DNA of 64,000 nt from Octopus sinensis (lineage: Eukaryota). The position numbers were made by a program, and so were the translations under genes. Below, in pieces: positions 5,418 to 53,675 of this stretch; position 1 is the stretch's first letter, and each line of letters starts with the position of its first letter. The notes under the pieces were generated by a model, which worked only from the letters and a program-made list of their open reading frames with translations, was not told the DNA's origin and ran no database searches. Location: the NCBI RefSeq assembly GCF_006345805.1, contig NC_043003.1, forward strand, positions 18,724,001-18,788,000, given 5' to 3'.

Positions 5418-6226
5418 CAGAGTGTGGTAAATAAATTGTTGTCTAAATTACACAAAAATGAAAATAATATTGACATCTCATTTTAATAGATATATTTACC
5501 AAAATTACATTTCAAATACTAAAGAGTAAATTTATTCAATAAAATTGCCAATGGCTTCAACCATGGCCTTCAGATGACTTTGGAATCTCCTGCAACTCTT
5601 CTGGACAGGCTCCAATTCATCCTTGATGTTACATGGAATTTTGTTGGTCTCTTGCTCAACTGTGCCCCATGCATAATAATCAAGGGGGTTGCATTCTAGG
5701 GAGTTAGGTGGCCAGATGTTAACGGTGATGTGGTCGCAGAAATTATCTGAAAGTCATGACTAGGTTCTCCTGCTTGGTGCAGAGTCCTGTTGCCAAGCAT
5801 AGTGTCTTCTAGCAACCACCCTCTTCACCCAGGGCAGTACTACCTCCTCCAGGCATTAGATGCAGGCCTCTGTGTGGAGTCAGAAGCTGTGTGGAAAGAT
5901 GAATGGAGGCATAATGTCACCATCCCGAGTGATCATTCCAAACACCATGATGTTGACTGGATGTTTGATTTTTATCACTCTCAGTATGTCCTCAGATTGA
6001 CACCCAAATACTCTGAAATGTTTGTATAGGAGCTTCCAGTGCAAATGCTGTTTCTAACTGCATGTTGTTTCTAAATTTTTGGCAGAATGAATTATAGTGC
6101 TGTTTTTCTCACAGACAGTGCCCAACTGACCCTATTATATCTTGTGGTCGATAAAATCAAAGGCAAACAATGCACATGCATGAAATTAGAAATATAAAAT
6201 GGCAACAATTTACCCATCACACCCCA
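5418..6226 (-). mobile_element. Internally deleted Tc1/mariner element, maT (DD37D)-like, decayed
   Basis: Minus strand ~5975-5545 reads KHPVNIMVFGMITRDGDIMPPFIFP...EEVVLPWVK...WQQDSAP...NIWPPNS.ECNP/DYYAWG with stops and a frameshift. Imperfect 26-bp TIRs (5418-5443 vs 6201-6226, 18/26 match), each flanked by TA. Confidence 0.85.
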
Positions 6227-12719: not shown

Positions 12720-13950
12720 ACTCAAAAATGCTACAGTAAAATGTAATTCATATGTGGTGTACATGGATGAACAAACATTGCCTAGGTTCTGCCTATTGTG
12801 CCAACAGTGTTTGATAAATTAATCCATGAAACATGAGATCATTTAAATGACAAAGCAGAGAATTCATGTAAACCCAAAGTTGGAATATTTTAAAATCATG
12901 AAGAGTTTGAAAATAGATCCACTTTTAAACCATTGCTTTCTGCACAAAAATCCAGCAATCATAATCTTGAGGCAATTCATGAAATTTCTCTACTTAAAAA
13001 AAAAAATGATGATAGAATTTATAGTAGAGGTCACATCATCATTTAGCATCTGCTTTCCATGCTGACATGGGTGGACAGTTTGACTGAGGACTGGCAAGCC
13101 AGGAAGCTGCACCAGCCTCCAGTCTGATCTGGCAAGGTTTCTACAGCTGGATGCCCTTCCTAACACCAACCACTCCAAGAGTGTAGTGGGTGCTTTTTAC
13201 ATGCTACCAGCATGGGGGCCAGTTAGGTGGCACTGGCATCAACCATGCTCAAATGGTGCTTTTTACATGCCACCAGCACAGGAGCCAGTCAGTGGATATA
13301 ATTAAGCAAGCAATATCAACTTTTCACAATACAGAACTGGAGAAGGTTGACCAAAATGTCTAAGACATGCCACTAACAAAAGGGTTTGCTGTAGAATAAA
13401 TAAGTACAGATATCTAAGAACAGCTTATTCAAAATCAAAATCAATGAAATTCACAACACCAACAAGGAGGCCTTATTGTTCAAACATGAGATGTATTAAT
13501 GAGGAAGAGTTTTGAGGAAAGGAAAGTATTTTGCAAATCTTTAGACAGTATCACTACTGAAGTTGATGTCCTAATAAACTTAAAAATTGGCTGACAATAA
13601 CACATAAAAAAAAAAAAAAATCATTGCCCTATACTACAGATGGCATCCATACTCAAAAAAGCAAGAAAAATGGGTGTTAAAATTGATGAGAGCATGACAA
13701 CCCAGTAATGTTACTGATGCATTTGTGAAAATTTAGTTGCCAAGAAATGTTTCACCTGTTTTAAATGAAACAGTAAAGCCAGTAAAAAAATATATCAACA
13801 TTATCAAAGCTAATGTTAAATGTGAGCATCTCTTTAAACAGTTTTGTGAGTGTCAAGATGAAACCCAAAGATGAGGAGCTAGTTAAAGCTATTTTTTCAA
13901 ATAAAAGGAATTGTGATGGGGCTCTGTGATGAGACAAAAATTAAATACCC
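12720..13950 (+). mobile_element. Decayed hAT transposase remnant (Buster/Charlie, ZBED8/SCAND3-like), interrupted by a SINE
   Basis: Colinear broken peptides FCLLCQQCLIN*SMK (BED finger), VFCKSLDSITTEVDV and LNETVKPVKKYINIIKANVKCEHLFKQFCE resemble Buster-family transposases. Confidence 0.75.
13030..13295 (-). mobile_element. Family C retroposon nested in the hAT remnant
   Basis: Same diagnostic sequence. Confidence 0.8.
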
Positions 13951-14818
13951 ACGTTCAGCTGGTTTTGGAAAGACAGGATAATTGTAACCATTCTCACCCT
14001 AATGTTTAGTAGGATGTAGTTTGGTGCTTCAAGTGACTTGCTAGAAGAGGGGGATGGGTTTACAATTCAATTAGATATCACAAAATAAGGAGATTTAAGA
14101 CAGAAGCTAAGCACTTGAAATCAAAACTATTTATAATTAATATCAAGCTGAAGAATCTCACTAGCCTGAGATGATCAAATTTTGAATTTGTTATATTTTT
14201 TCACCAAATATCACTTGAAAACCACCAACTTGAAAACAAACAGGGGTTGATGCAACATGCTGCTTCAAGAAGCTTCACTTAATCCATCATAGCATGGAAG
14301 AAGTGGGCATAAAATCAACAGAGATGGTCAATGAGGAGAGGAGCTATTATACATGATCGTATGTAAACAAAAACAAAAAAAAACAAAAAAAATTAAAGTT
14401 AATCAGTAAGAAAAAAAAACCCTTCAAGGAAAAAATTAATTATGGTGTTTGCGCTGTCCAAGTTGCACAGAGTTTCCCTTCTCACTCTCATTAACAGAAA
14501 TATTGTAAGTCTATGATTGGCTCCTTGAAAACCAGTTGCCAATGATGTTTTAATTCACAATGAAATATGAAAAATCAATAAATGTCACAAAGTTAAGTTT
14601 GTTTACTTTTTGTTCATTTCTTTTTCTTTTTTTATGGTTAATTAATATAGATCAATATATTTCATTTTGTTATAATAAATCTGATTATTAAAGATTTATT
14701 TCATAGACATGCTATCCAGCAATTTTTTTTAAAGATAAGCTGAAATTAAAAAAACAACAACAAACTGACAAGTTGCAGAGTACAAATTATGAAAACAAAA
14801 GTTTGTTATCAAACTTAC

Positions 14819-14920
14819 TCTAGTGTTATTTCGTTCTGCTTTCAATTCTGATATTTCTTCCTCCCTTTCTAATAGCTGTTCTCGAGCAGCACTCAATTCT
14901 TTAGTTATAGTAGCAAATTC
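14819..14920 (-). CDS. PPFIA: Internal coding exon of liprin-alpha (N-terminal coiled-coil/LH1 region), 102 nt, phase 0/0
   Basis: Translates to [34 protein letters not shown], closely matching the liprin-alpha motif [34 protein letters not shown]. Acceptor tctttcttgcattttcag|GAA at 14921; donor AGA|GTAAGT at 14818. Confidence 0.93.
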
Positions 14921-15365
14921 CTGAAAATGCAAGAAAGATTCCATCAGTGAATTTCAATTTCCATATTTTTAAAACAATTGAAATGATTATGATTAAAACA
15001 TTCACAAAAATTATGCATAAGCAAAGAGGAAAACTGTTTTATAGAAAACATTACCACAAAAGAAACAAACATTGACAATATAAGAGGAGAATGTTGATAA
15101 ACAATACTAAATTATTTCTATAATTTTCTCCTATCTGTTTTAATGAAGCAAAAATAAGAACGAAAAATTATATCAAAACAACCAATAAAAGTTCCATTAG
15201 GTTAATTACATCTAATATGATTTTTCAATTAATACAATTAATATATTTATATCAATATAAATATACTGGCAGTAAAAGTGTGCATGCATGCATACACACA
15301 CACTCTCTCTCTCTCTCTCTCTTATCTATCTATCTATATATATATATACACATATATATATCTAT

Positions 15366-20457: not shown

Positions 20458-22687
20458 TAAAGAGTTATATTAGCTTTATATTTAAGTCAAGTATTTATTT
20501 TATCAGTCTCGTTTGCTGAACCACCAAATTATGACAGTCATCAACATTGTTTCTTGGAGGGTGGGGGCACAGAAGCACGCGCGCGCACACTCACACACAC
20601 ACACAATATATGGCAACTTCATTCCAATTGCCCAGTAACTAAGTTGTATATAACCCCTAATTTCACATTTAACTACTTAAAAAAGAAAGAAAAATACAAT
20701 AATCATGTATTATACATGACTGTTCTAACAAGGGAGTAGCTGCAAAGTAGTTTGAGCTGACCTACTAAAAAAAATAGTCAAAGAAGCTTCCACATATTAC
20801 TCCCCACTACCTTAGAAAGTTGAGACATAGTAGCATCACTTACTAAAATAGAAGCCAAAGCTTCCTCAAATCACTACCTTTTGCCTTAGAAAGTAAGATC
20901 ATGTTAGATAATGGAACCCAACATATTTTTGAATTGAGGACAAGATGATATGAGCTGGAATATCTTCCCTCCTCAGTTTGCTCAGTCAGAACTGACCTAA
21001 GCTAAACAAGTTAGATCTTTAGACAAAGTTTTTTTTTTTTCTAATGAATTATAGCATCTAAAAAATCCCGAAACATAGAAACTCTGTCTCTAAGATATGA
21101 GCATCTATCATTTCACTGTAGGTTTCTCATAGACCTAATTGTTGAAATAGTCAGTATAAAGCTTGCAACAACTGTTCCTCACAAAAGCATTGTGTAAAGA
21201 AGGTAAAATTTTATAAGTTTTCAGCACTCAGATTACTGTCTAATATGATGCTTATTAATCATACATTATCTTGAAACTTTAAAGACAATGATGTGAGAGC
21301 TTATTTTTAGAATGACATTGTAAGACAGATCTGAGAGGCTCGGTTTGCCAGTTTGAACATAAAACAGGTAGAATATTTGGGCCTCATATGTTCAATTTAA
21401 ATGGTGAAGAGTTAAACATATGCAACTATATTCTTAATGGTAATATAACAATGATAAACAGAATAGCTGTAAATCACTGCAGAAAAATGTATTTTGAAGA
21501 AATAATCTTAGATTTGAAAACCAATAGAATTAATTAAAAGAATTGGCTGATATTTATTGCTTGCATGTAAAATAGCAATTACATGAAAAATGGAAAATAA
21601 TTTTCACAATTGTAAAAATTTCAAATGTGAACAAAAATGACATGATTCGAAACATTTCTCTAACAAACAGGCTATGGGTTTGTCCTCTTTCAAAAGCACT
21701 ATAAAAAAATATATGTAAGTAAAAACAAATCAAAAGACTTGTGTACAATTAGGTCATCAGTTATAATAACGACTGTCTATTAGACAAATCAATTAGTAAA
21801 ATGAAGACAATGGAGATACAATAAGCCAAATGTATTAGAGAAACTTAATGATTATCAGTTGTTTTGGTTAGAGATTATTAGAAACAAAGTCATTAGATAT
21901 GTAAAAAATGTTTCTATGTGAAGAATTTACAAAATATGGCTAGCAACCAATAAGTACTTCTATAGCGAATATCATCTTTCCTAAAGAAATAATGCTGCCT
22001 GAAGATAAAACCAACCTACAGTAATGATATAATAACAAAGAAAGTAAAGTGCATACTTGCTCCTTGGTTACAGATATGATCTGTCAAGTTACAACTGAAT
22101 ATAGCTACACCTACGATTATGACCGAAGTGAGTCAAGATTAGCAAGTTCTCACTCACACACACATGTTTTACACTGTATAACCTGCTAAAACTTAAGAAA
22201 GAGATGATAATCATCAGCCAAAGAATAAATGATTGATTACAGCTAGCAAAGAAACCAACCCTAAATTCTGTATTTAGAGAGGTGGTACCCAAGTCGTTTG
22301 ATGCTCAGGGCTTACTGTAACCGAGAGGAATTTAACAAATGTTCCCTCCATATGTTTTATATAAGAAAAAAAAATAAATAAAAACTAATTATTTTAATCA
22401 AACAGAAGCTAATTTTGTATACTGGTTATTACCTATATTTTCTTAACAGATTCCAATCAGCATGTGGCTCCCTCCAGATATTTATATGGATTTATGCCCC
22501 ACTGCATTAAACTTTTATGAAAATACTAAAGAAGGTGAGGATTGACATAATGAAATTATAGTGGAGTGTTCAAGCATTACTAGTCATGCTTCTGCTCACT
22601 GATAATGCAATGCCTTTCTTGTATTTTAATCCTGACAAAGATTTTTTTTTTTTTTTCAAAAATTTATACAGAGTATAACTATTGTAT

Positions 22688-22960
22688 CATCATCATCATC
22701 ATCGTTTAACGTCCGTTCTCCATGCTAGCATGGGTTGGACAGTTCGACCGGGGATCTGGGAAGCCAGAAGGCTGCACCAGGCTCCGGTCTTATCTAGCAA
22801 AGTTTCTACAGCTGGATGCCCTTCGTAACGCCAACCACTCCGTGAGTGTAGTGGGTGCTTTTTACGTGCCACCTGCACTGGTGCCAGGCGAGGCTGGCAT
22901 CGGTCACGGTCGGATTGGTGCATTTTATGGAAGCCAGTCAAGGCGGCACTGGCTTCGGCT
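22688..22960 (-). mobile_element. Family C retroposon (young)
   Basis: Same diagnostic sequence, CpGs retained. Confidence 0.85.
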
Positions 22961-26015: not shown

Positions 26016-26571
26016 ATAACACACAGAAAGTAAAGAGAAATGAAGCTAGAAAGAAATGAAAACAAGAAAGCAAGACACACTGAACAAAACAGAGAGGTGG
26101 GGGTAGTCCAGAATATTTGCAGACAGTTGGCTAATTCTAAATGAGACTGTTGAAATGGAGACAACAGGTGCATATTTGAATCTAAGATTAATACAAGGAC
26201 ATAAATGTCAGACAGACACCAGACTACGAAGAAGCCAGACTACTCAATGTCTTGTTCTGTAAGAATTTAACTTCACTAAATAGTATTAGTTTATACATTA
26301 TTCAGTGTCCACTTTCCATGCAAAGAGCAGGGGACAAAAGTTACCGAGGCAGATTTTCACCACCCAGATGCCCTTCCTGTCACCAACCTTTACCTGTTTC
26401 CAAGTAAGGTGATATCTCCTTAAGGCCAGACGTGTACTCACAGGTTACTGAAAATGAATGAAACTACTTATACGACAGTGACACTCATTTACAACCATCA
26501 CAATGTCAAGATCACGCACGCACACGCGCGCACACACACACACACACACAACAGGGTTTTTTCAATTTCTT

Positions 26572-26985
26572 ATTTCTTTATTGCCCACAAGGGACTAAAC
26601 ATAGAGGGCACAAACAAGGACAGATGAAGGGATTAAGTTGATTACATCGAGCCCAGTGTGTAACTGGTACTTAATTTATCGACCTCAAAAGGATGAAAGG
26701 CAAAGTTGTCCTCGGCGGAATTTGAACTCAGAACGTAAAGACAGACGAAATACCTATTTCTTTACTACCCACAAGGGGCTAAACACAGAGAGGACAAACA
26801 AGGACAGACAAACGGATTAAGTCGATTATATCAACCCCAGTGCGTAACTGGTACTTATTTAATCAACCACGAAAGGGTGAAAGGCAAAGTCGACCTCAGC
26901 GGAATTTGAACTCATAACGTAGCAGCAGACGAAATACCACTAAGCATTTCACTCAGTGTGCTAACGTTTCTGTCAGCTCGCCACC
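26572..26985 (-). mobile_element. SINE family B: two tandem copies (one 5'-truncated, one near full length)
   Basis: Two successive CCCAGTG..AACTGGTACTT...GAAAGGCAAAGT..CCTC.GCGGAATTTGAACTC blocks. Confidence 0.85.
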
Positions 26986-38665: not shown

Positions 38666-40427
38666 ATGTATACTAGTGTAATCCTTTGCCTCGAGCCGAG
38701 TCCCTCTTTGTGAAGAGGTGACTTATTCATTTTTGATTAATAAAAACCATCAAGACTGAAATTAGTGCCGGGATCAACACGATGGATTAGTGAAGGCAGT
38801 GCCCCAACAGGGCTGCATTTTCTGCATGAAATGCAACAAAAGAATAAGGAAAAGAATATACACATATACATACATGCACACAAACATAAACCAGATACAT
38901 ATAAAGACATATAGCTCAACAGACACAGTTTATGGGTATTAAAAGGCAAGAGACTGTTTTAGGAGCTCATTTCCAAAATAGAACAGTATTCTTGTGCATT
39001 TAGCTTTGTTGATTTATTATTTATTAACTGTCATTAGTTTATTCCTCAGAGGAATATTTTGTACATAGCATTCACACTCAGCAACACACAACTCACTGCT
39101 AAAATGACACCTTGGAGTTCTTTCCTTCTTTTCATTTTATATTAGTAATGATATGCAGTCGTTTATTTGGCAGAAAATTTTTTTTTTCCTTTAGAGGAGC
39201 ACACTAGTTTGGCATTGGCAAATGCCTAATGAAACAGGGTTAATGGTCACAAGTCATTGCAATTCTCATCTTCCTGAGAAAAGCTCTGAGCAGTTGGGAC
39301 CTGCAAAAGAATAGCTGCCAAATCCCCCACAAATCACACACCCTATCTTTAAAAGGAAGGACATGGTAAATGCATTATGCCTGAAGATGAAAAAAAAACA
39401 AAATGGGATGGTCATGGTAAGATTGACATTGATTGTAAGTCTACTTAGTCGGAGCTGACTTGGCTTTTTTTGAAATTATAGCTACACTTGTTCTCTAAAT
39501 ATATTAAGAAAGTGAATTTGCTCTTCAACAAGTTGATGTTGCAGAACAGTTTAGCCATCAACATATCAACATTTTGATTTTCAGCAGAGCTATAACAATA
39601 TCAACTGGTGCCCATCTTAACAAATTCAAACCCATAGTCTTTATCTTAAAACAGTTAAGAAGTTGTCTAAACTAATGAAATCCTGCATGCCGCATATGAC
39701 TGATTAGAGAAATGATTTACAAATAACCATGAGTAAATAAATATCTCTTTAAATAAATATCTCATTCAGGAGAAGGAGGTGATAGAATTAGAAAATGAAA
39801 GTGAATACTTTTCAAGAGAAAAATAGCTTTCAGAACAATGGAATATAACCACATTTTCAACTGGATTTCTGATCTATATAATAACTATTTCAGCAACACG
39901 TCTGAATGATAATGAAAAATGAAAAGCTAAAAACTACCCAATCCATAAATTTTATATGACTACATCAGCTCAGACCATATCCAACTATAAGCATACATAG
40001 AGATTATCGCATCAAATTTAACATGAAACCATTTTTGGAATATTTTTTTTAACAAAATATACCAGATTACAAAGGAAAAAAAAGTTAGGGGAATTTTTTT
40101 TCTGTTTCTCAGCAGTTATTGTTTTAACTATAAGGAATAAATATTTCAATAGATAACTAATTTTGCTTAATGCATACAAATTATAACAGAAAAAGGAGAA
40201 AAAAGTTGCTGTTTTTTTCCCTAATTATTAGTAAATCTTTTAGCTATGAGGACTAAATATTTCATTAGCAAACTAATTTTCTTAATGAGTAAAATACTAT
40301 TGTGATGTTAATTATATACAAACTGGCAACTAGTAAAAAGTACCTCTAACTCAGAAAATTGCTTTATTATTCTTTCAAAACATTAAAAATATTAGTTGTT
40401 TTTTTTTTGTCCATGTTAAAAACTTAC

Positions 40428-40535
40428 CTGAACAAAATACTTGAGATGCTTTATATCATTATTCTTCAATCTTGACACAACATGATCAATCCCCCGCAAA
40501 TTAACGTCTAAGTGTAGATTAAATCCGTTAGCCAT
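40428..40535 (-). CDS. Candidate alternative first coding exon of liprin-alpha (36 aa: MANGFNLHLDVNLRGIDHVVSRLKNNDIKHLKYFVQ)
   Basis: ATG at 40535; 36 uninterrupted codons ending at CAG|GTAAGT (donor 40427-40422). Phase 0 matches the acceptor of the 14920 exon, on the same strand. Non-repetitive sequence; no convincing acceptor just upstream of the ATG. Confidence 0.6.
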
Positions 40536-41514
40536 CGAGTCAGATGACAACAAATATATACATATACATATATATATATAAATATATATATATATATTTA
40601 TATTTATTTATATACAAACATAAAATATTAATGATCTCAAAAATATCTACTTTGACTTTCTTTAATGCCAAAAACTACACTTTTTGGCATTCTCTCCTTT
40701 AAAAAAATACTTTATATTCAAACTTTCTGTGGTGTATTTGTTTGGTGGATGTATGTATGTGTAGGTATTATATATGTATATATAGATATATATGGGTATG
40801 TGTGTATATATGTATGTATGTATATATACTCATACAATGGTGGTATTATTTTCTTTACACTTGCTTTTTTTTTTTACTTAGACGAAGTAAAAATAAGACT
40901 AAAATAATATATATATAAAAAAAGGGGGAAAAAAGAAAGATAAAGTAAACCACACAACAAGAGAAACTAAACTGCAAGGTGATGGGGTAATGAATGAAAA
41001 GATAAATTTATATCCAGAGGTTGCAGAATAAAGAGGTAAATCCACTCCAATGGTAGATATCCATGGAAAAAAGAGGTATCCATTAGTTTAATCCATGGTA
41101 GTAAATATGAAATGTTCATCAGCTTGGAAGTAACTTTACACAGCCTCATTGTAGCCAAATAGTAACACATGGCTACAAACAATTGCATCCAATGCTGAAG
41201 AATGGTTATGGCTAATTACAGCTTAATGTTTGCAGACACTGGTGGGGGTAAAAGAAAAGGGGAACAAAAAAAAAATGAAAATGAATTGAATTGCTTCACA
41301 ATTACAAAGCTTTCACCACTGATTAGACACAAGCTGCTGTTACTGTTGCTACCATCCCAAAGTATCCATCATATGTATGCATCAAAAACCAATATATTTT
41401 ATCCTTAGTGATTCTGATAGGTTGACAACACTGTGGTTACCAAAAGATGAAGCATGCTGATTACGTTCACATCACTATCTGCAATAGAAGCTACTCCAGC
41501 TGATGAAACTGCCT

Positions 41515-41585
41515 CGGTAGTAGCAGTAGCAGTGGGGGTGATATTAGCAGCGGCAAGATCAGCAGCAGCAGCAGCAGAAGCAGAG
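41515..41585. repeat. Imperfect (AGC/AGT)n trinucleotide tract
   Basis: gtagtagcagtagcagt...agcagcagcagcagcagaagcag. Confidence 0.8.
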
Positions 41586-41779
41586 ATGCTAATGGCCATT
41601 CCTCTAATTCTGCTATTAACTTGTAACAGTAGGTAAACTGCAATACAAGAGCAGCATTGGGGAAAGTTTTTATGTCTTGTCTTACTAGAAACTAATGCAA
41701 GTTATAAACTGTGAACTACACGACTAACATCTATTTTTTATGTAGCAGAAGCAGAAAGAGAAAAAACAAAACATGCACA

Positions 41780-42207
41780 CACGCACATCCAAGTATTATT
41801 TTCCAAACACAGGAACATGCACACACACACACATCCAAATATTATTTTCCACACACACACGCACACACTGAAACACATATCCAGATATTATTTTCCAAAC
41901 ACAGGAACACACACACACACACACACACACACCCAAATATCATTTTCCACACACACATGCACACATGTCCAAGTATTATTTTCTAAAAGTTCACGCGCAG
42001 AAAAACACACATCTAAGTATTATTACACACACACACACACACACGCACACACTCACACACACACACACACACACACATCCAAATATCATTTTCCACACAC
42101 ACGTGCACACTGAAACACATATCCAGATATTATTTTCCATACACACATACACACACGTCCAAGTATTATTTTCCAAAAGTACATGCATACAGAAACACAC
42201 ATCTAAG

Positions 42208-42239
<32 letters not shown>

Positions 42240-45659: not shown

Positions 45660-45693
<34 letters not shown>

Positions 45694-52410: not shown

Positions 52411-52709
52411 AGAACTTGCAAGATAATTTCCTTCAACGGGACAGGGTATAGACTAGAGTAAGAAATTATGATAGAGAGACACACACACATATATACAAAT
52501 GTGTGTGTGTGTGTGTGCGCGCGCGCGTATGTGTGTACATATACATATACACAAATACAATATTTTTACAGTGCTATGCATTTATTCTTTTAAACTTAAT
52601 CTCTCGTCTACCCCTAAGATTTAAAATTTCCTCAAACTTTTCGTCATCCCGTTCCTCTGGGAAGTAATACCAGTAATATACTGAAACACTGCCATCTAAT
52701 ACAACTCAC

Positions 52710-53105
52710 GTCCACCAAAAATTGTCCTGCGTTTAGTAAAAAAAATATATTATTGCTTTTGTTTAGTTCAAAATCATCCCTGATAGAACAGAACTATGAT
52801 GAGAGTCGTTCCGATAGTGACCATCCCATCTTTTTGTACATGAAGGACTACAATATCCAATGTGTCCTTCCATTGTTTATCACAAGAGAATGTGATTTGG
52901 AGGGATATTCGGTTGCCATTTGCCTACCACGCAGAACCTTAGGCGGAATCCACCCAGTTGCAAGTATTCGGACCAAGTGTCCGCGCGATTCGGTGATGTC
53001 TTCCTTCTTCTCTCCCTCCAGAGAACCTGTAATGGATCGTCCGCATTGCCCTTCCCTCTTAACTAAACGACCGGGATGGGAGCGAAAAATTCGTCGAGTC
53101 GTCAG
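52710..53105 (-). promoter_or_regulatory. CpG-rich unique segment; candidate internal promoter / non-coding first exon
   Basis: Roughly 18 CpGs by manual count in 52801-53101, against a CpG-poor background. Ends at a GAC|GTGAGT donor (52709-52704) on the host strand. The ATGs I traced on the minus strand hit stops before the donor. Confidence 0.45.
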
Positions 53106-53334
53106 AAAAAAAAAAAAAACAGTTTAAAAAATACATTTAGAATCAAGGGAAATAACTCTTACATAACTTTCCTTTCGTTAAAAATTTTACAAAGCGAAGT
53201 TAATTATTTCCTCTTTATCTGAGACACTTTTTAAGTGGTAGAAACGTTAACTTGAATCCAATTACTTTGAGCTTAAACTATTGAAATTTATGTTCAAGAC
53301 AATTCTACTTTATGTTGTTTAGATTTTACTTCTA

Positions 53335-53675
53335 ATGGAGTTAAGAATTCACTTCCTACCCATATGGTTCCGGGTTCAGTACCATTGCGTAGTACTTTGG
53401 GTGTTCTCTATAGGAGCACCAAGCCATGTGAGTAAATTTTGTAGGCGGAAACTGTATCGAAGCCCATCGCGCGCGCGCGCGTTTGTCCCTGTCCACACCG
53501 CTTGACAGCCGGTGTTGGTTTGCTTACATCCATATCACTAGCGGCTTGGTAAAACGAATAAGTACAAGACTTCAAAAAGAATTAATAAGCACTGGGGTTG
53601 ATTTGTTCAACTAAAACTCAAGGCAGTGCCCCAGCATGGCCACAGTCCAATGACTGAAACAAGTAAAAAATAAAA
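53335..53675 (+). mobile_element. SINE family A copy
   Basis: GGTTCCGGGTTCAGT head, (CG)n in place of the usual microsatellite, standard tail. Confidence 0.8.

What the first reader, a model, noticed from the sequence alone, without database searches (positions are those of the whole stretch)
40428..40535. Hidden alternative first exon that would give liprin-alpha a new 36-aa N-terminus
Seen in sequence: an ATG-started 108-nt open frame (MANGFNLHLDVNLRGIDHVVSRLKNNDIKHLKYFVQ) in unique sequence. It ends exactly at CAG|GTAAGT, phase 0, on the same strand and 25.5 kb upstream of the phase-0 liprin-alpha exon EFATITKEL. It is below the ORF-track length cut-off. Established: in liprin-alpha/SYD-2, the exon normally preceding EFAxLTKEL encodes the start of the N-terminal coiled-coil (LH1) region implicated in oligomerisation and active-zone assembly. 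Inference: this exon would replace that segment with a peptide I do not recognise, giving a possibly cephalopod-specific synaptic scaffold isoform with altered self-assembly.
Basis: partly seen in the sequence, partly recalled or inferred. Interest (0 to 1): 0.72.

Follow-up and report, generated by a model that had tools for sequence, protein, structure and literature searches.

The report
Conserved alternative first exon of liprin-alpha
The small open frame is most likely a real alternative first coding exon of the octopus synaptic scaffold gene liprin-alpha. It is not a cephalopod invention: the same exon occurs in insects, a scorpion and an annelid, and no paper found here describes it.

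Summary
A 36-codon ATG-started frame lies at 40535..40428 on the minus strand. It ends at CAG|GTAAGT in phase 0, 25.5 kb upstream of the phase-0 liprin-alpha exon EFATITKEL (14920..14819).

ORF and donor features alone do not exceed chance. A search with the hypothetical spliced N-terminus changed that. Its best hits were annotated liprin-alpha isoforms whose alternative N-terminus joins the same exon: Tenebrio, Tribolium, Homalodisca, Helicoverpa, Dalotia, the scorpion Centruroides and the annelid Lamellibrachia.

The octopus peptide shares their layout:
- Its own Met sits just before an NG[FY]xL motif.
- It has 34 residues from NG to the final Q.
- It ends F-V-Q at a GT donor.

It is the best match among all 15,289 open 36-mers of the window to most of these references. 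None of 1.5 million random peptides reached its joint score. It lacks some family-invariant residues (His-Gly, Q-x-F), and arthropod-only profiles do not detect it. No octopus transcript containing it was found.

The exon replaces the 80 residues before LH1, not LH1 itself. Verdict: a probable real exon and a new member of an annotated but uncharacterised exon family. The claim of cephalopod specificity is refuted. Interest is moderate.

The parts
40428..40535 (-). Candidate alternative first coding exon, coding part: 36 codons, MANGFNLHLDVNLRGIDHVVSRLKNNDIKHLKYFVQ. The 5' end of the exon (the transcription start) is not defined.
   Evidence: Searches give the sequence and translation. It ranks 1 of 15,289 open 36-mers of the window against the alternative exons of Lamellibrachia, Centruroides, Homalodisca, Helicoverpa, P0406 and P0409. 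0 of 1.5 million random peptides reach the joint score.
40533..40535 (-). Initiator ATG. It is the first in-frame ATG after the stop at 40610-40608. The context is gactcgATGg.
   Evidence: The Met sits two residues before the NGF motif, as in the scorpion (MATNGF) and in P0409 (MSNGL).
40422..40427 (-). 5' splice donor GTAAGT, directly after the codon CAG, phase 0.
   Evidence: It is the only CAG|GTAAGT on either strand of the window. Family members end the same way: CAG|GTGAGA in L002, CAA|GTAGGT in L001, and Val (GTN) read-through after F[VIM][QK] in the genomic ORFs.
14819..14920 (-). Liprin-alpha coding exon 2 ([34 protein letters not shown], 34 codons). This is the start of the LH1 region and the proposed splice target.
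   Evidence: E 7e-13 to PDB liprin-alpha-2 7d2g/7d2h. 100% identical to the octopod transcript P0156 over this exon.
14921..14940 (-). 3' splice acceptor of exon 2: pyrimidine-rich tract ending ttttcag, phase 0.
   Evidence: read directly.
14813..14818 (-). Donor GTAAGT of exon 2. The next exon (LLLEHLECLV...) lies beyond the window.
   Evidence: The tblastn finds no further liprin exon in the window.
40554..40614 (.). (TA)n microsatellite 19 nt 5' of the ATG. This is context only: the presumed 5' UTR or promoter region has no recognisable promoter feature.
   Evidence: TRF. One search shows no CpG-rich island upstream; CpG o/e is 0.65-0.66 over the two 400-nt bins that cover the exon, against 0.29 for the window.

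Best explanation
The frame at 40535..40428 (minus strand) is the octopod copy of an old alternative first coding exon of liprin-alpha/SYD-2.

Proposed mechanism: a promoter inside the very long first intron starts a transcript at or shortly upstream of this exon. The canonical exon 1 lies beyond the window's upstream end, at least 23.5 kb from the candidate. Translation starts at the ATG at 40535. The exon is spliced from the consensus donor (40427) to the phase-0 acceptor of the EFATITKEL exon (14920).

The product would lack the canonical first 80 residues. These hold the MMCDVMPTISEDG motif, which fits the B56/PP2A LxxIxE pattern, and the first heptad-repeat helix (FEQLMVNMLDERDKL...). In their place it would carry 36 residues: a short NGF cap followed by an amphipathic stretch. 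By analogy with a model of the scorpion isoform, that stretch would extend the LH1 helix N-terminally. LH1, CC2 and the SAM domains are unchanged.

Shown: the sequence features, the absence of canonical exon 1 from the window, the existence of the exon family in other phyla, and the similarity statistics.
Inferred: homology, use of the exon in octopus, the internal promoter, and any functional consequence.
For: 1. Search result. With the hypothetical spliced N-terminus as query, the top hits were liprin-alpha isoforms with an alternative N-terminus joined to the same exon. They scored 54-63 bits, against about 49-51 bits for isoforms that match exon 2 only.
2. Shared anatomy (alignment A1). 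The Met lies 2-3 residues before NG[FYL]. There are 34 residues from NG to the final Q, the same as in Lamellibrachia and P0406. Gly15 is invariant. The exon ends [LI]-x-x-F-V-Q at a GT donor in phase 0.
3. Window-wide ranking. Among all 15,289 open 36-mers in six frames, the candidate, in exactly the donor register, ranks first against six references: Lamellibrachia (32 vs next 23), Centruroides (36 vs 26), Homalodisca (33 vs 26), Helicoverpa (29 vs 22), P0406 (59; 12/36 ungapped identities) and P0409 (41 vs 25). It is unremarkable against two controls, the fish alpha-4 exon (rank 1292) and the end of canonical exon 1 (rank 8897).
4. Random peptides with M and Q fixed. p is about 3-4e-5 per reference. 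0 of 1.5 million reach the summed score (maximum 91 against 101 observed). Against P0406, 0 of 1.5 million reach the observed score, with a tail estimate of 5e-8.
5. Profile without octopus. An HMM built only from Lamellibrachia, P0406 and P0409 ranks the candidate first of the window's 3,530 six-frame peptides (13.3 bits, E 0.015). P0406 and P0409 are themselves clear family members by an arthropod-only HMM (30.6 and 34.2 bits).
6. Gene geometry. tblastn with the octopod transcript finds only exon 2 in the window. Canonical exon 1 is a single 80-codon exon (P0244-P0247). The candidate therefore lies inside intron 1, on the right strand and in the right phase.
7. The frame is intact, it has the only CAG|GTAAGT in the window, and CpG is locally retained.
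Against: - No octopod protein or transcript fragment containing the peptide was found in the 5.8-billion-protein collection within the length ranges searched (38-122, 123-392 and 549-1748 aa), nor among the 1.84 billion representatives. The only octopod transcripts retrieved (P0156, P0249) carry the canonical N-terminus.
- Arthropod-dominated profiles do not detect the octopus peptide (0.1-1.7 bits, rank 60 to about 200). It lacks the family's invariant His-Gly (it has Asn-Asp) and the Q-x-F positions.
- The reference sequences were found by searches seeded with the octopus peptide, so the per-reference p-values need correcting for selection. The correction is hundreds of distinct N-termini for the named references and 43 family members for P0406.
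- No other cephalopod or mollusc copy could be examined.
- No promoter signature lies upstream.
- The organisms behind P0406 and P0409 are unknown; both come from metagenome contigs.
Confidence: 0.7

Rival explanations
1. Relic exon. The sequence descends from the conserved alternative first exon but octopods no longer use it. Either the isoform was lost or another copy is used, and the frame, ATG and donor persist without function.
For: - The most conserved family positions are lost: His-Gly has become Asn-Asp and Q-x-F has become V-x-R (alignment A1).
- Arthropod profiles score it at about 1 bit.
- No octopod transcript carrying it was found.
- No promoter-like feature lies upstream; low-complexity repeats abut the ATG.
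Against: - In a 35% GC genome a 36-codon frame stays open by chance only about 7% of the time. Here the ATG, the frame and a perfect 9/9 donor are all intact.
- The annelid copy, which sits in an annotated protein, is almost as divergent from arthropods (10.1 bits). Divergence alone therefore does not mean decay.
- CpGs are retained in the exon.
Confidence: 0.15
2. Chance ORF. This is an intronic open frame that happens to start with ATG and abut a consensus donor, and the resemblance to the insect, scorpion and annelid exons is coincidental.
For: - Five comparable background ATG-ORF-plus-GTRAGT combinations occur in the same window.
- The comparison sequences were selected by searches seeded with the peptide itself.
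- Arthropod HMMs give non-significant scores.
Against: - The candidate ranks 1 of 15,289 against six references from at least four lineages, with margins of 7-16 BLOSUM units for the five where the runner-up is an independent frame. For P0406 the runner-up (score 50) may be a shifted copy of the candidate frame; this was not checked. The two control references give nothing.
- 0 of 1.5 million random peptides reach the joint score. The tail estimate against P0406 is p about 5e-8.
- The top search hits were all members of one genuine exon family, not assorted intron read-throughs. The read-through hits that could be compared scored 53-54 bits, against about 49-51 for exon 2 alone.
- The NG-to-Q length is identical (34) to the annelid and P0406.
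Confidence: 0.1
3. It is part of something else. It could be an internal cassette exon inserted between canonical exons 1 and 2, or an exon of an unrelated overlapping transcript.
For: Both junctions would be phase 0, so inclusion after exon 1 would keep the reading frame.
Against: - There is no AG acceptor in the roughly 100 nt upstream of the ATG, and an in-frame stop lies at 40610-40608.
- Every family member starts with its own Met and is annotated as the N-terminus.
- No Pfam family matches the ORF.
Confidence: 0.05

Closest known systems
Alternative-N-terminus liprin-alpha isoforms in RefSeq/GenBank: liprin-alpha-1 isoform X12 of Tenebrio molitor and Tribolium castaneum, isoforms X1-X12 of Homalodisca vitripennis, X10 of Helicoverpa armigera, X5 of Dalotia (Atheta) coriaria, liprin-alpha-3-like isoform X2 of Centruroides sculpturatus, and Liprin-alpha-1 of Lamellibrachia satsuma
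   Same: - A short first coding exon with its own Met.
- An NG[YFV]xL motif near the start and one invariant Gly.
- An amphipathic stretch ending [ILV]-x-x-F-[VILM]-[QK].
- A phase-0 junction directly onto EF(A/T)T(L/I)TKEL, replacing canonical exon 1.
- The octopus and annelid copies have the same NG-to-Q length (34).
   Different: - Octopus lacks the invariant His-Gly and the Q-x-F positions. It is 21-28% identical to each member, and arthropod profiles do not detect it.
- Insects have a linker three residues shorter and often a long Asn-rich tail before the motif.
- The octopus copy is unannotated and has no transcript support here.
Canonical liprin-alpha/SYD-2 N-terminus (exon 1: MMCDVMPTISEDG...FEQLMVNMLDERDKL...TTPQ)
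   Same: It has the same downstream partner exon and the same phase. By the read-through residues VSD in P0244 it has the same kind of donor (Q|GTAAGT-like).
   Different: There is no sequence similarity (rank 8897 of 15,289). It is 80 residues rather than 36. It carries the motif that fits LxxIxE: SLiM1 lies within the first 30 residues of human liprin-alpha1 (PMC12273559), and its identification with MPTISE is my inference. It is not present in the window.
Vertebrate liprin-alpha-4/-2 short alternative N-terminus (fish MNPTSVKIHLQNGIHFNTYMYQ|EFATLTKEL; bird and snake variants)
   Same: It is also an alternative first coding exon joined in phase 0 to the same exon. It contains an NG motif and ends aromatic-x-aromatic-Q.
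   Different: It is only about 22 residues long. It shows no significant similarity to the octopus peptide (rank 1292 of 15,289). Homology to the protostome exon was not established.

Membership tests
Protostome liprin-alpha alternative first coding exon (NG[YF]...HG...QF[VIM][QK] class) | Own initiator Met a few residues upstream of an NG[YFVL]xL motif | tested here: met
   Octopus has MANGFNL. Compare MATNGFDL (scorpion P0252), MSNGLKNHL (P0409/L002) and MPVPRNGVTL (Lamellibrachia). The octopus ATG is the first in-frame ATG after a stop.
Protostome liprin-alpha alternative first coding exon (NG[YF]...HG...QF[VIM][QK] class) | Ends F-[VILM]-[QK] exactly at a GT donor, phase 0 | tested here: met
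   Octopus ends YFVQ|GTAAGT. L002 ends FLQ|GTGAGA and L001 ends FLQ|GTAGGT. Most of the genomic ORFs read through into Val (GTN).
Protostome liprin-alpha alternative first coding exon (NG[YF]...HG...QF[VIM][QK] class) | Lies upstream of, and on the same strand as, the EFxTxTKEL exon, whose acceptor is phase 0 | tested here: met
   It lies 25.5 kb upstream on the minus strand, and the acceptor ttttcag|GAA is phase 0.
Protostome liprin-alpha alternative first coding exon (NG[YF]...HG...QF[VIM][QK] class) | Length of 30-35 residues from NG to the last residue | tested here: met
   34 in octopus, 34 in Lamellibrachia and P0406, 35 in P0409, 30-31 in arthropods.
Protostome liprin-alpha alternative first coding exon (NG[YF]...HG...QF[VIM][QK] class) | Conserved core residues: Gly before the helix, [LV]-Q-x-[FL]-[LV], His-Gly, [CY]-[ILV]-x-x-F | tested here: inconclusive
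   Present: Gly15, Val19/Leu23, Leu31 and Phe34. Absent: Gln (Val20 instead), Phe/Leu (Arg22 instead), His-Gly (Asn26-Asp27 instead) and Cys/Tyr (His30 instead) (alignment A1).
Protostome liprin-alpha alternative first coding exon (NG[YF]...HG...QF[VIM][QK] class) | Detected by a family profile built without the candidate | tested here: inconclusive
   A profile of the three long-linker members gives rank 1 of 3,530 peptides, 13.3 bits, E 0.015. Arthropod-only or arthropod-dominated profiles give 0.1-1.7 bits, rank 60 to about 200.
Protostome liprin-alpha alternative first coding exon (NG[YF]...HG...QF[VIM][QK] class) | Transcribed and spliced to exon 2 as the first coding exon | not testable with these tools
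   No octopod transcript or protein with the peptide was found. No RNA-seq reads or cephalopod genomes are on hand.
Liprin-alpha / SYD-2 gene | The downstream exon encodes the conserved start of LH1 (EFAxxTKEL...AERNNTR) | tested here: met
   E 7e-13 to liprin-alpha-2 (7d2g/7d2h). 100% identical to the octopod liprin-alpha transcript P0156, whose cluster holds Argonauta hians and Octopus bimaculoides liprin-alpha.

The most novel reading that the evidence does not exclude
The NG[FY]...F-V-Q exon may be a protostome-wide alternative N-terminal module of liprin-alpha, older than 500 million years by standard divergence dates. It is now traced to a mollusc as well as arthropods and an annelid. 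It would produce a functionally distinct scaffold that keeps LH1, CC2 and the SAM domains but swaps the B56-motif-bearing, first-helix segment for a different helix. That could change PP2A recruitment, oligomerisation or autoinhibition at particular synapses or in non-neuronal cells. No paper found here describes this isoform, including a 2026 family review.
Probability: 0.45. Interest if true: 0.6.

Novelty: new member of a known kind. Interest (0 to 1): 0.45.

Why it matters
Liprin-alpha/SYD-2 is a core organiser of presynaptic active zones. Its N-terminal coiled coil controls oligomerisation, phase separation and partner recruitment.

Suppose an alternative N-terminus has been kept from arthropods and annelids to cephalopods. 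Then invertebrate liprin-alpha is two proteins at its N-terminal end. Work that uses only the canonical cDNA, or alleles that hit only exon 1, may miss or spare one of them.

The practical gains are two. Cephalopod annotation gets a concrete, testable exon. Fly and beetle geneticists get an isoform-specific target.

Tried and rejected
1. ORF and donor statistics alone cannot separate the candidate from background.
2. Profiles dominated by arthropod sequences do not detect the octopus peptide. This is recorded as evidence against, not explained away.
3. Searches for an octopod transcript or protein with the peptide in three length ranges and by profile over 1.84 billion representatives found none.
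5. A degenerate DNA pattern for MANGFNLHL in metagenome contigs gave one GC-rich bacterial contig (L003). This is a chance match.
7. Cluster look-ups of ten family ORFs gave only one name, Ranatra chinensis.
9. A promoter or CpG island upstream: none was seen.
10. A cassette-exon reading was rejected because there is no acceptor and there is an upstream in-frame stop.
11. Pfam has no family for the ORF or for neighbouring ORFs.
12. Literature: no paper holds 'liprin-alpha' together with 'alternative first exon'. The hits for 'alternative promoter' were unrelated. A looser search on alternative 5' ends turned up only general liprin papers. In the 2026 family review the word 'alternative' occurs once, in a reference title.

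Full report
**Observation.** On the minus strand an ATG at 40535 opens 36 sense codons, MANGFNLHLDVNLRGIDHVVSRLKNNDIKHLKYFVQ. The last codon, CAG (40430-40428), is followed directly by GTAAGT. On the same strand, 25.5 kb downstream, lies the exon [34 protein letters not shown] (14920-14819). It sits between ttttcag and GTAAGT and matches liprin-alpha-2 chains 7d2g and 7d2h at E 7e-13. The description is therefore accurate.

**Chance.** The window is 35% GC, so open stretches are common: 15,289 open 36-mers in six frames. Of the 63 GTRAGT sites, 7 have an ATG-started phase-0 frame of at least 30 codons. Five of those are background; one is the candidate and one is the true exon 2 with a spurious intronic ATG. 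The full CAG|GTAAGT occurs once on either strand, and my own base-composition arithmetic expects about 0.4. Nothing in these features alone separates the candidate from background.

**Gene geometry.**
- An octopod liprin-alpha transcript was recovered from the protein collection: P0156, 1172 aa, a Logan assembly. Its cluster also holds Argonauta hians and Octopus bimaculoides liprin-alpha.
- tblastn of this transcript against the window finds only the EFATITKEL exon.
- Canonical exon 1 is a single 80-codon exon, MMCDVMPTISEDGSNDRESQGSQDDANFEQLMVNMLDERDKLMETLRETQDAYSLAQAKLAEVERERDAFQKQLQATTPQ. It is seen as genomic ORFs P0244-P0247 that read through into VSD....
- Exon 1 is absent from the window, so it must lie beyond 64000. 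The candidate therefore sits inside intron 1, at least 23.5 kb below exon 1 and 25.5 kb above exon 2.

**The key result.** I searched the 5.8-billion-protein collection with the hypothetical spliced N-terminus (36 aa plus exon 2), scoring only those 70 residues and allowing full-length candidates. The best hits were not the isoforms with the best exon 2. They were liprin-alpha isoforms with an alternative N-terminus joined to the same exon:
- Tenebrio and Tribolium isoform X12: ...NGYRLLSAQGMETLQTFLREHGNECIKQFVK|EFATLTKEL
- Homalodisca isoforms X1-X12 (eight of the twelve retrieved, plus one cluster representative)
- Helicoverpa isoform X10
- Dalotia isoform X5
- The annelid Lamellibrachia satsuma: MPVPRNGVTLVGDMVCGGGHTVQRFVNLHGEKRLSHFIQ|EYTTITKEL

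A repeat for shorter proteins added the scorpion Centruroides isoform X2, MATNGFDLRRYGMENLQNLLKTHGSQCLHHFLQ|EFATLTKEL. These score 54-63 bits, against about 49-51 for exon-2-only matches. Two kinds of hit with chance extensions scored lower: genomic ORFs that read from the upstream intron into exon 2, and gene models that carry such sequence. Those that could be compared reached 53-54 bits.

A profile of these exons plus the octopus peptide (A1) was run against 1.84 billion representatives. It returned 43 hits at E of 0.001 or better. The weakest is a 3,928-aa protein matched only in short repeated stretches. The other 42 carry the exon: most are short genomic ORFs ending F[VIM][QK] and then reading into Val (GTN, the donor), and one is the scorpion isoform itself.

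Two of these ORFs, from metagenome contigs of unknown animals, are of the long-linker type shared by the annelid and the octopus:
- P0406: MPAPLPRNKNGFTMPLELRLRGMETVKSFVRLHGDEYIKQFLQ|gtaggt
- P0409: MSNGLKNHLRLYQVQGMQTIQTFVKLHGEEYLRQFLQ|gtgaga

| Test | Result |
|---|---|
| Candidate among all 15,289 open 36-mers, end-anchored BLOSUM62 score | Rank 1 against Lamellibrachia (32 vs next 23; ungapped 23 vs 10, 10/36 identities), Centruroides (36 vs 26), Homalodisca (33 vs 26), Helicoverpa (29 vs 22), P0409 (41 vs 25) and P0406 (59, 12/36 ungapped identities) |
| Same test, Tenebrio and Dalotia | Rank 2-3 |
| Same test, controls | Rank 1292 (fish alpha-4 alternative exon) and rank 8897 (end of canonical exon 1) |
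| Random peptides of window ORF composition, M and Q fixed | p about 3-4e-5 per reference |
| Joint score over three references | 0 of 1.5 million reach 101 (maximum 91) |
| Against P0406 | 0 of 1.5 million reach 59 (maximum 42; tail estimate 5e-8) |
| HMM built only from Lamellibrachia, P0406 and P0409 | Candidate ranks 1 of 3,530 window peptides, 13.3 bits, E 0.015 |
| Arthropod-only HMM on P0406 and P0409 | 30.6 and 34.2 bits, so both are independent family members |

**Cautions.**
- The references were found by searches seeded with the octopus peptide, so the single-reference p-values must be discounted for selection. The factor is a few hundred distinct N-termini for the named references and 43 family members for P0406. 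The joint and P0406 figures survive this.
- Arthropod-dominated profiles give the octopus peptide only 0.1-1.7 bits. It lacks the invariant His-Gly and the Q-x-F positions. The annelid copy, which sits in an annotated protein, is also weak by this measure (10.1 bits).
- No cephalopod or named mollusc copy and no octopod transcript with the peptide were found.
- No promoter-like or CpG-rich feature lies upstream. A (TA)n array abuts the ATG.

**What it replaces.** SYD-2 LH1 is aa 91-207, and the primer used to clone it begins at QELQTMT, the nematode equivalent of QEFATIT (PMC3857474). LH1 therefore starts with exon 2 and is untouched. The swap removes the 80 residues before LH1. In human liprin-alpha1 a B56 LxxIxE motif, SLiM1, lies within the first 30 residues. 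It was reported to bind B56-gamma and helps B56-delta binding when SLiM4 (LKSLFE) is mutated (PMC12273559). The octopod MPTISE fits that pattern, which is my inference. LKSLFE lies in a later exon and would be retained.

An AlphaFold2 model of the scorpion isoform's first 162 residues uses a shallow five-row alignment and a monomer, so it is only indicative. It puts residues 8-91 in one helix, with pLDDT of 71-86 over the alternative exon. The alternative exon would thus extend the LH1 helix, with MATNGFD disordered.

**Comparison with what is known.** The isoform exists in automated annotation (RefSeq isoforms of insects and a scorpion; a GenBank annelid model). I found no paper that describes it:
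- No paper holds 'liprin-alpha' together with 'alternative first exon'.
- The 'alternative promoter' hits are unrelated.
- A looser search on alternative 5' ends gave only general liprin papers.
- The 2026 family review mentions only the C-terminal splice variant.

The octopus exon is thus a new, divergent member of an annotated but uncharacterised exon family. It extends that family to molluscs.

**Verdict.**

| Reading | Estimated probability |
|---|---|
| Real, used alternative first exon homologous to the family | 0.70 |
| Homologous relic, no longer used | 0.15 |
| Chance ORF | 0.10 |
| Something else | 0.05 |

It is wrong on cephalopod specificity and on LH1.

Noticed in passing
proteins P0146, P0150-P0152, P0159, P0162-P0166, P0168, P0134: Vertebrate liprin-alpha-4/-2 isoforms carry a different short alternative N-terminus joined to the same exon. 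Fish have MNPTSVKIHLQNGIHFNTYMYQ|EFATLTKEL; birds and snakes have variants with NGIN. It also has an NG motif and ends aromatic-x-aromatic-Q, but the octopus peptide is not significantly similar to it (rank 1292 of 15,289).
   Followed up: partly
P0295 (Octopus bimaculoides UniProt model); window 45685 minus strand: The O. bimaculoides model starts MREREC and then continues with EFATITKEL, so it is a fragmentary model with a tiny different 5' exon. The window has a (GA)n-encoded MRERERERD at 45685 on the same strand, but without a matching donor. This is probably an annotation artefact.
   Followed up: partly
window 41776-42239, 40749-40827, 40554-40614: There is a minisatellite with 46/98/146-bp units rich in (AC)n, together with (ATGT)n and (TA)n arrays, in the 1.7 kb upstream of the exon. 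On the minus strand the minisatellite reads as repeated Cys/Val-rich ORFs.
   Followed up: no
window 52600-53400, 2600-2800, 22600-22800, 26500-26700, about 61900: These are patches of high CpG o/e (0.7-1.2, against 0.29 for the window). Several fall where one search lists repeated ORF families (for example ...HVKSTHYTHGVVGVRKGIQP and ...HSQGFGRPEAIVEDTCPRCHAVGLNLEPCGW). These look like young interspersed repeats. Copies of such ORFs also occur near 13100, 18200, 19400, 24600, 43200 and 46850.
   Followed up: no
window 5535-6053 minus strand: These ORF pieces look like the C-terminal part of a DDE transposase by eye (…NIMVFGMITRDGDIMPPFIFP…, …WPPNSLECNPLDYYAWG…). They have no Pfam match at E of 0.01 or better.
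   Followed up: partly
window 41408-41701 minus strand: A 98-codon open frame with an Ala/Thr-rich (GCT)n-like stretch lies in a locally GC-richer segment (0.40-0.41), about 0.9-1.2 kb upstream of the exon's ATG. It has no Pfam match. Whether it belongs to the 5' region of the alternative transcript is unknown.
   Followed up: no
L001 (JGI metagenome 3300040954) and L002 (ENA ERZ27251157): Animal DNA sits in metagenome assemblies. Both contigs carry a liprin-alpha alternative first exon of the long-linker type. Their source organisms are unknown, and they are the closest relatives of the octopus exon found here.
   Followed up: partly
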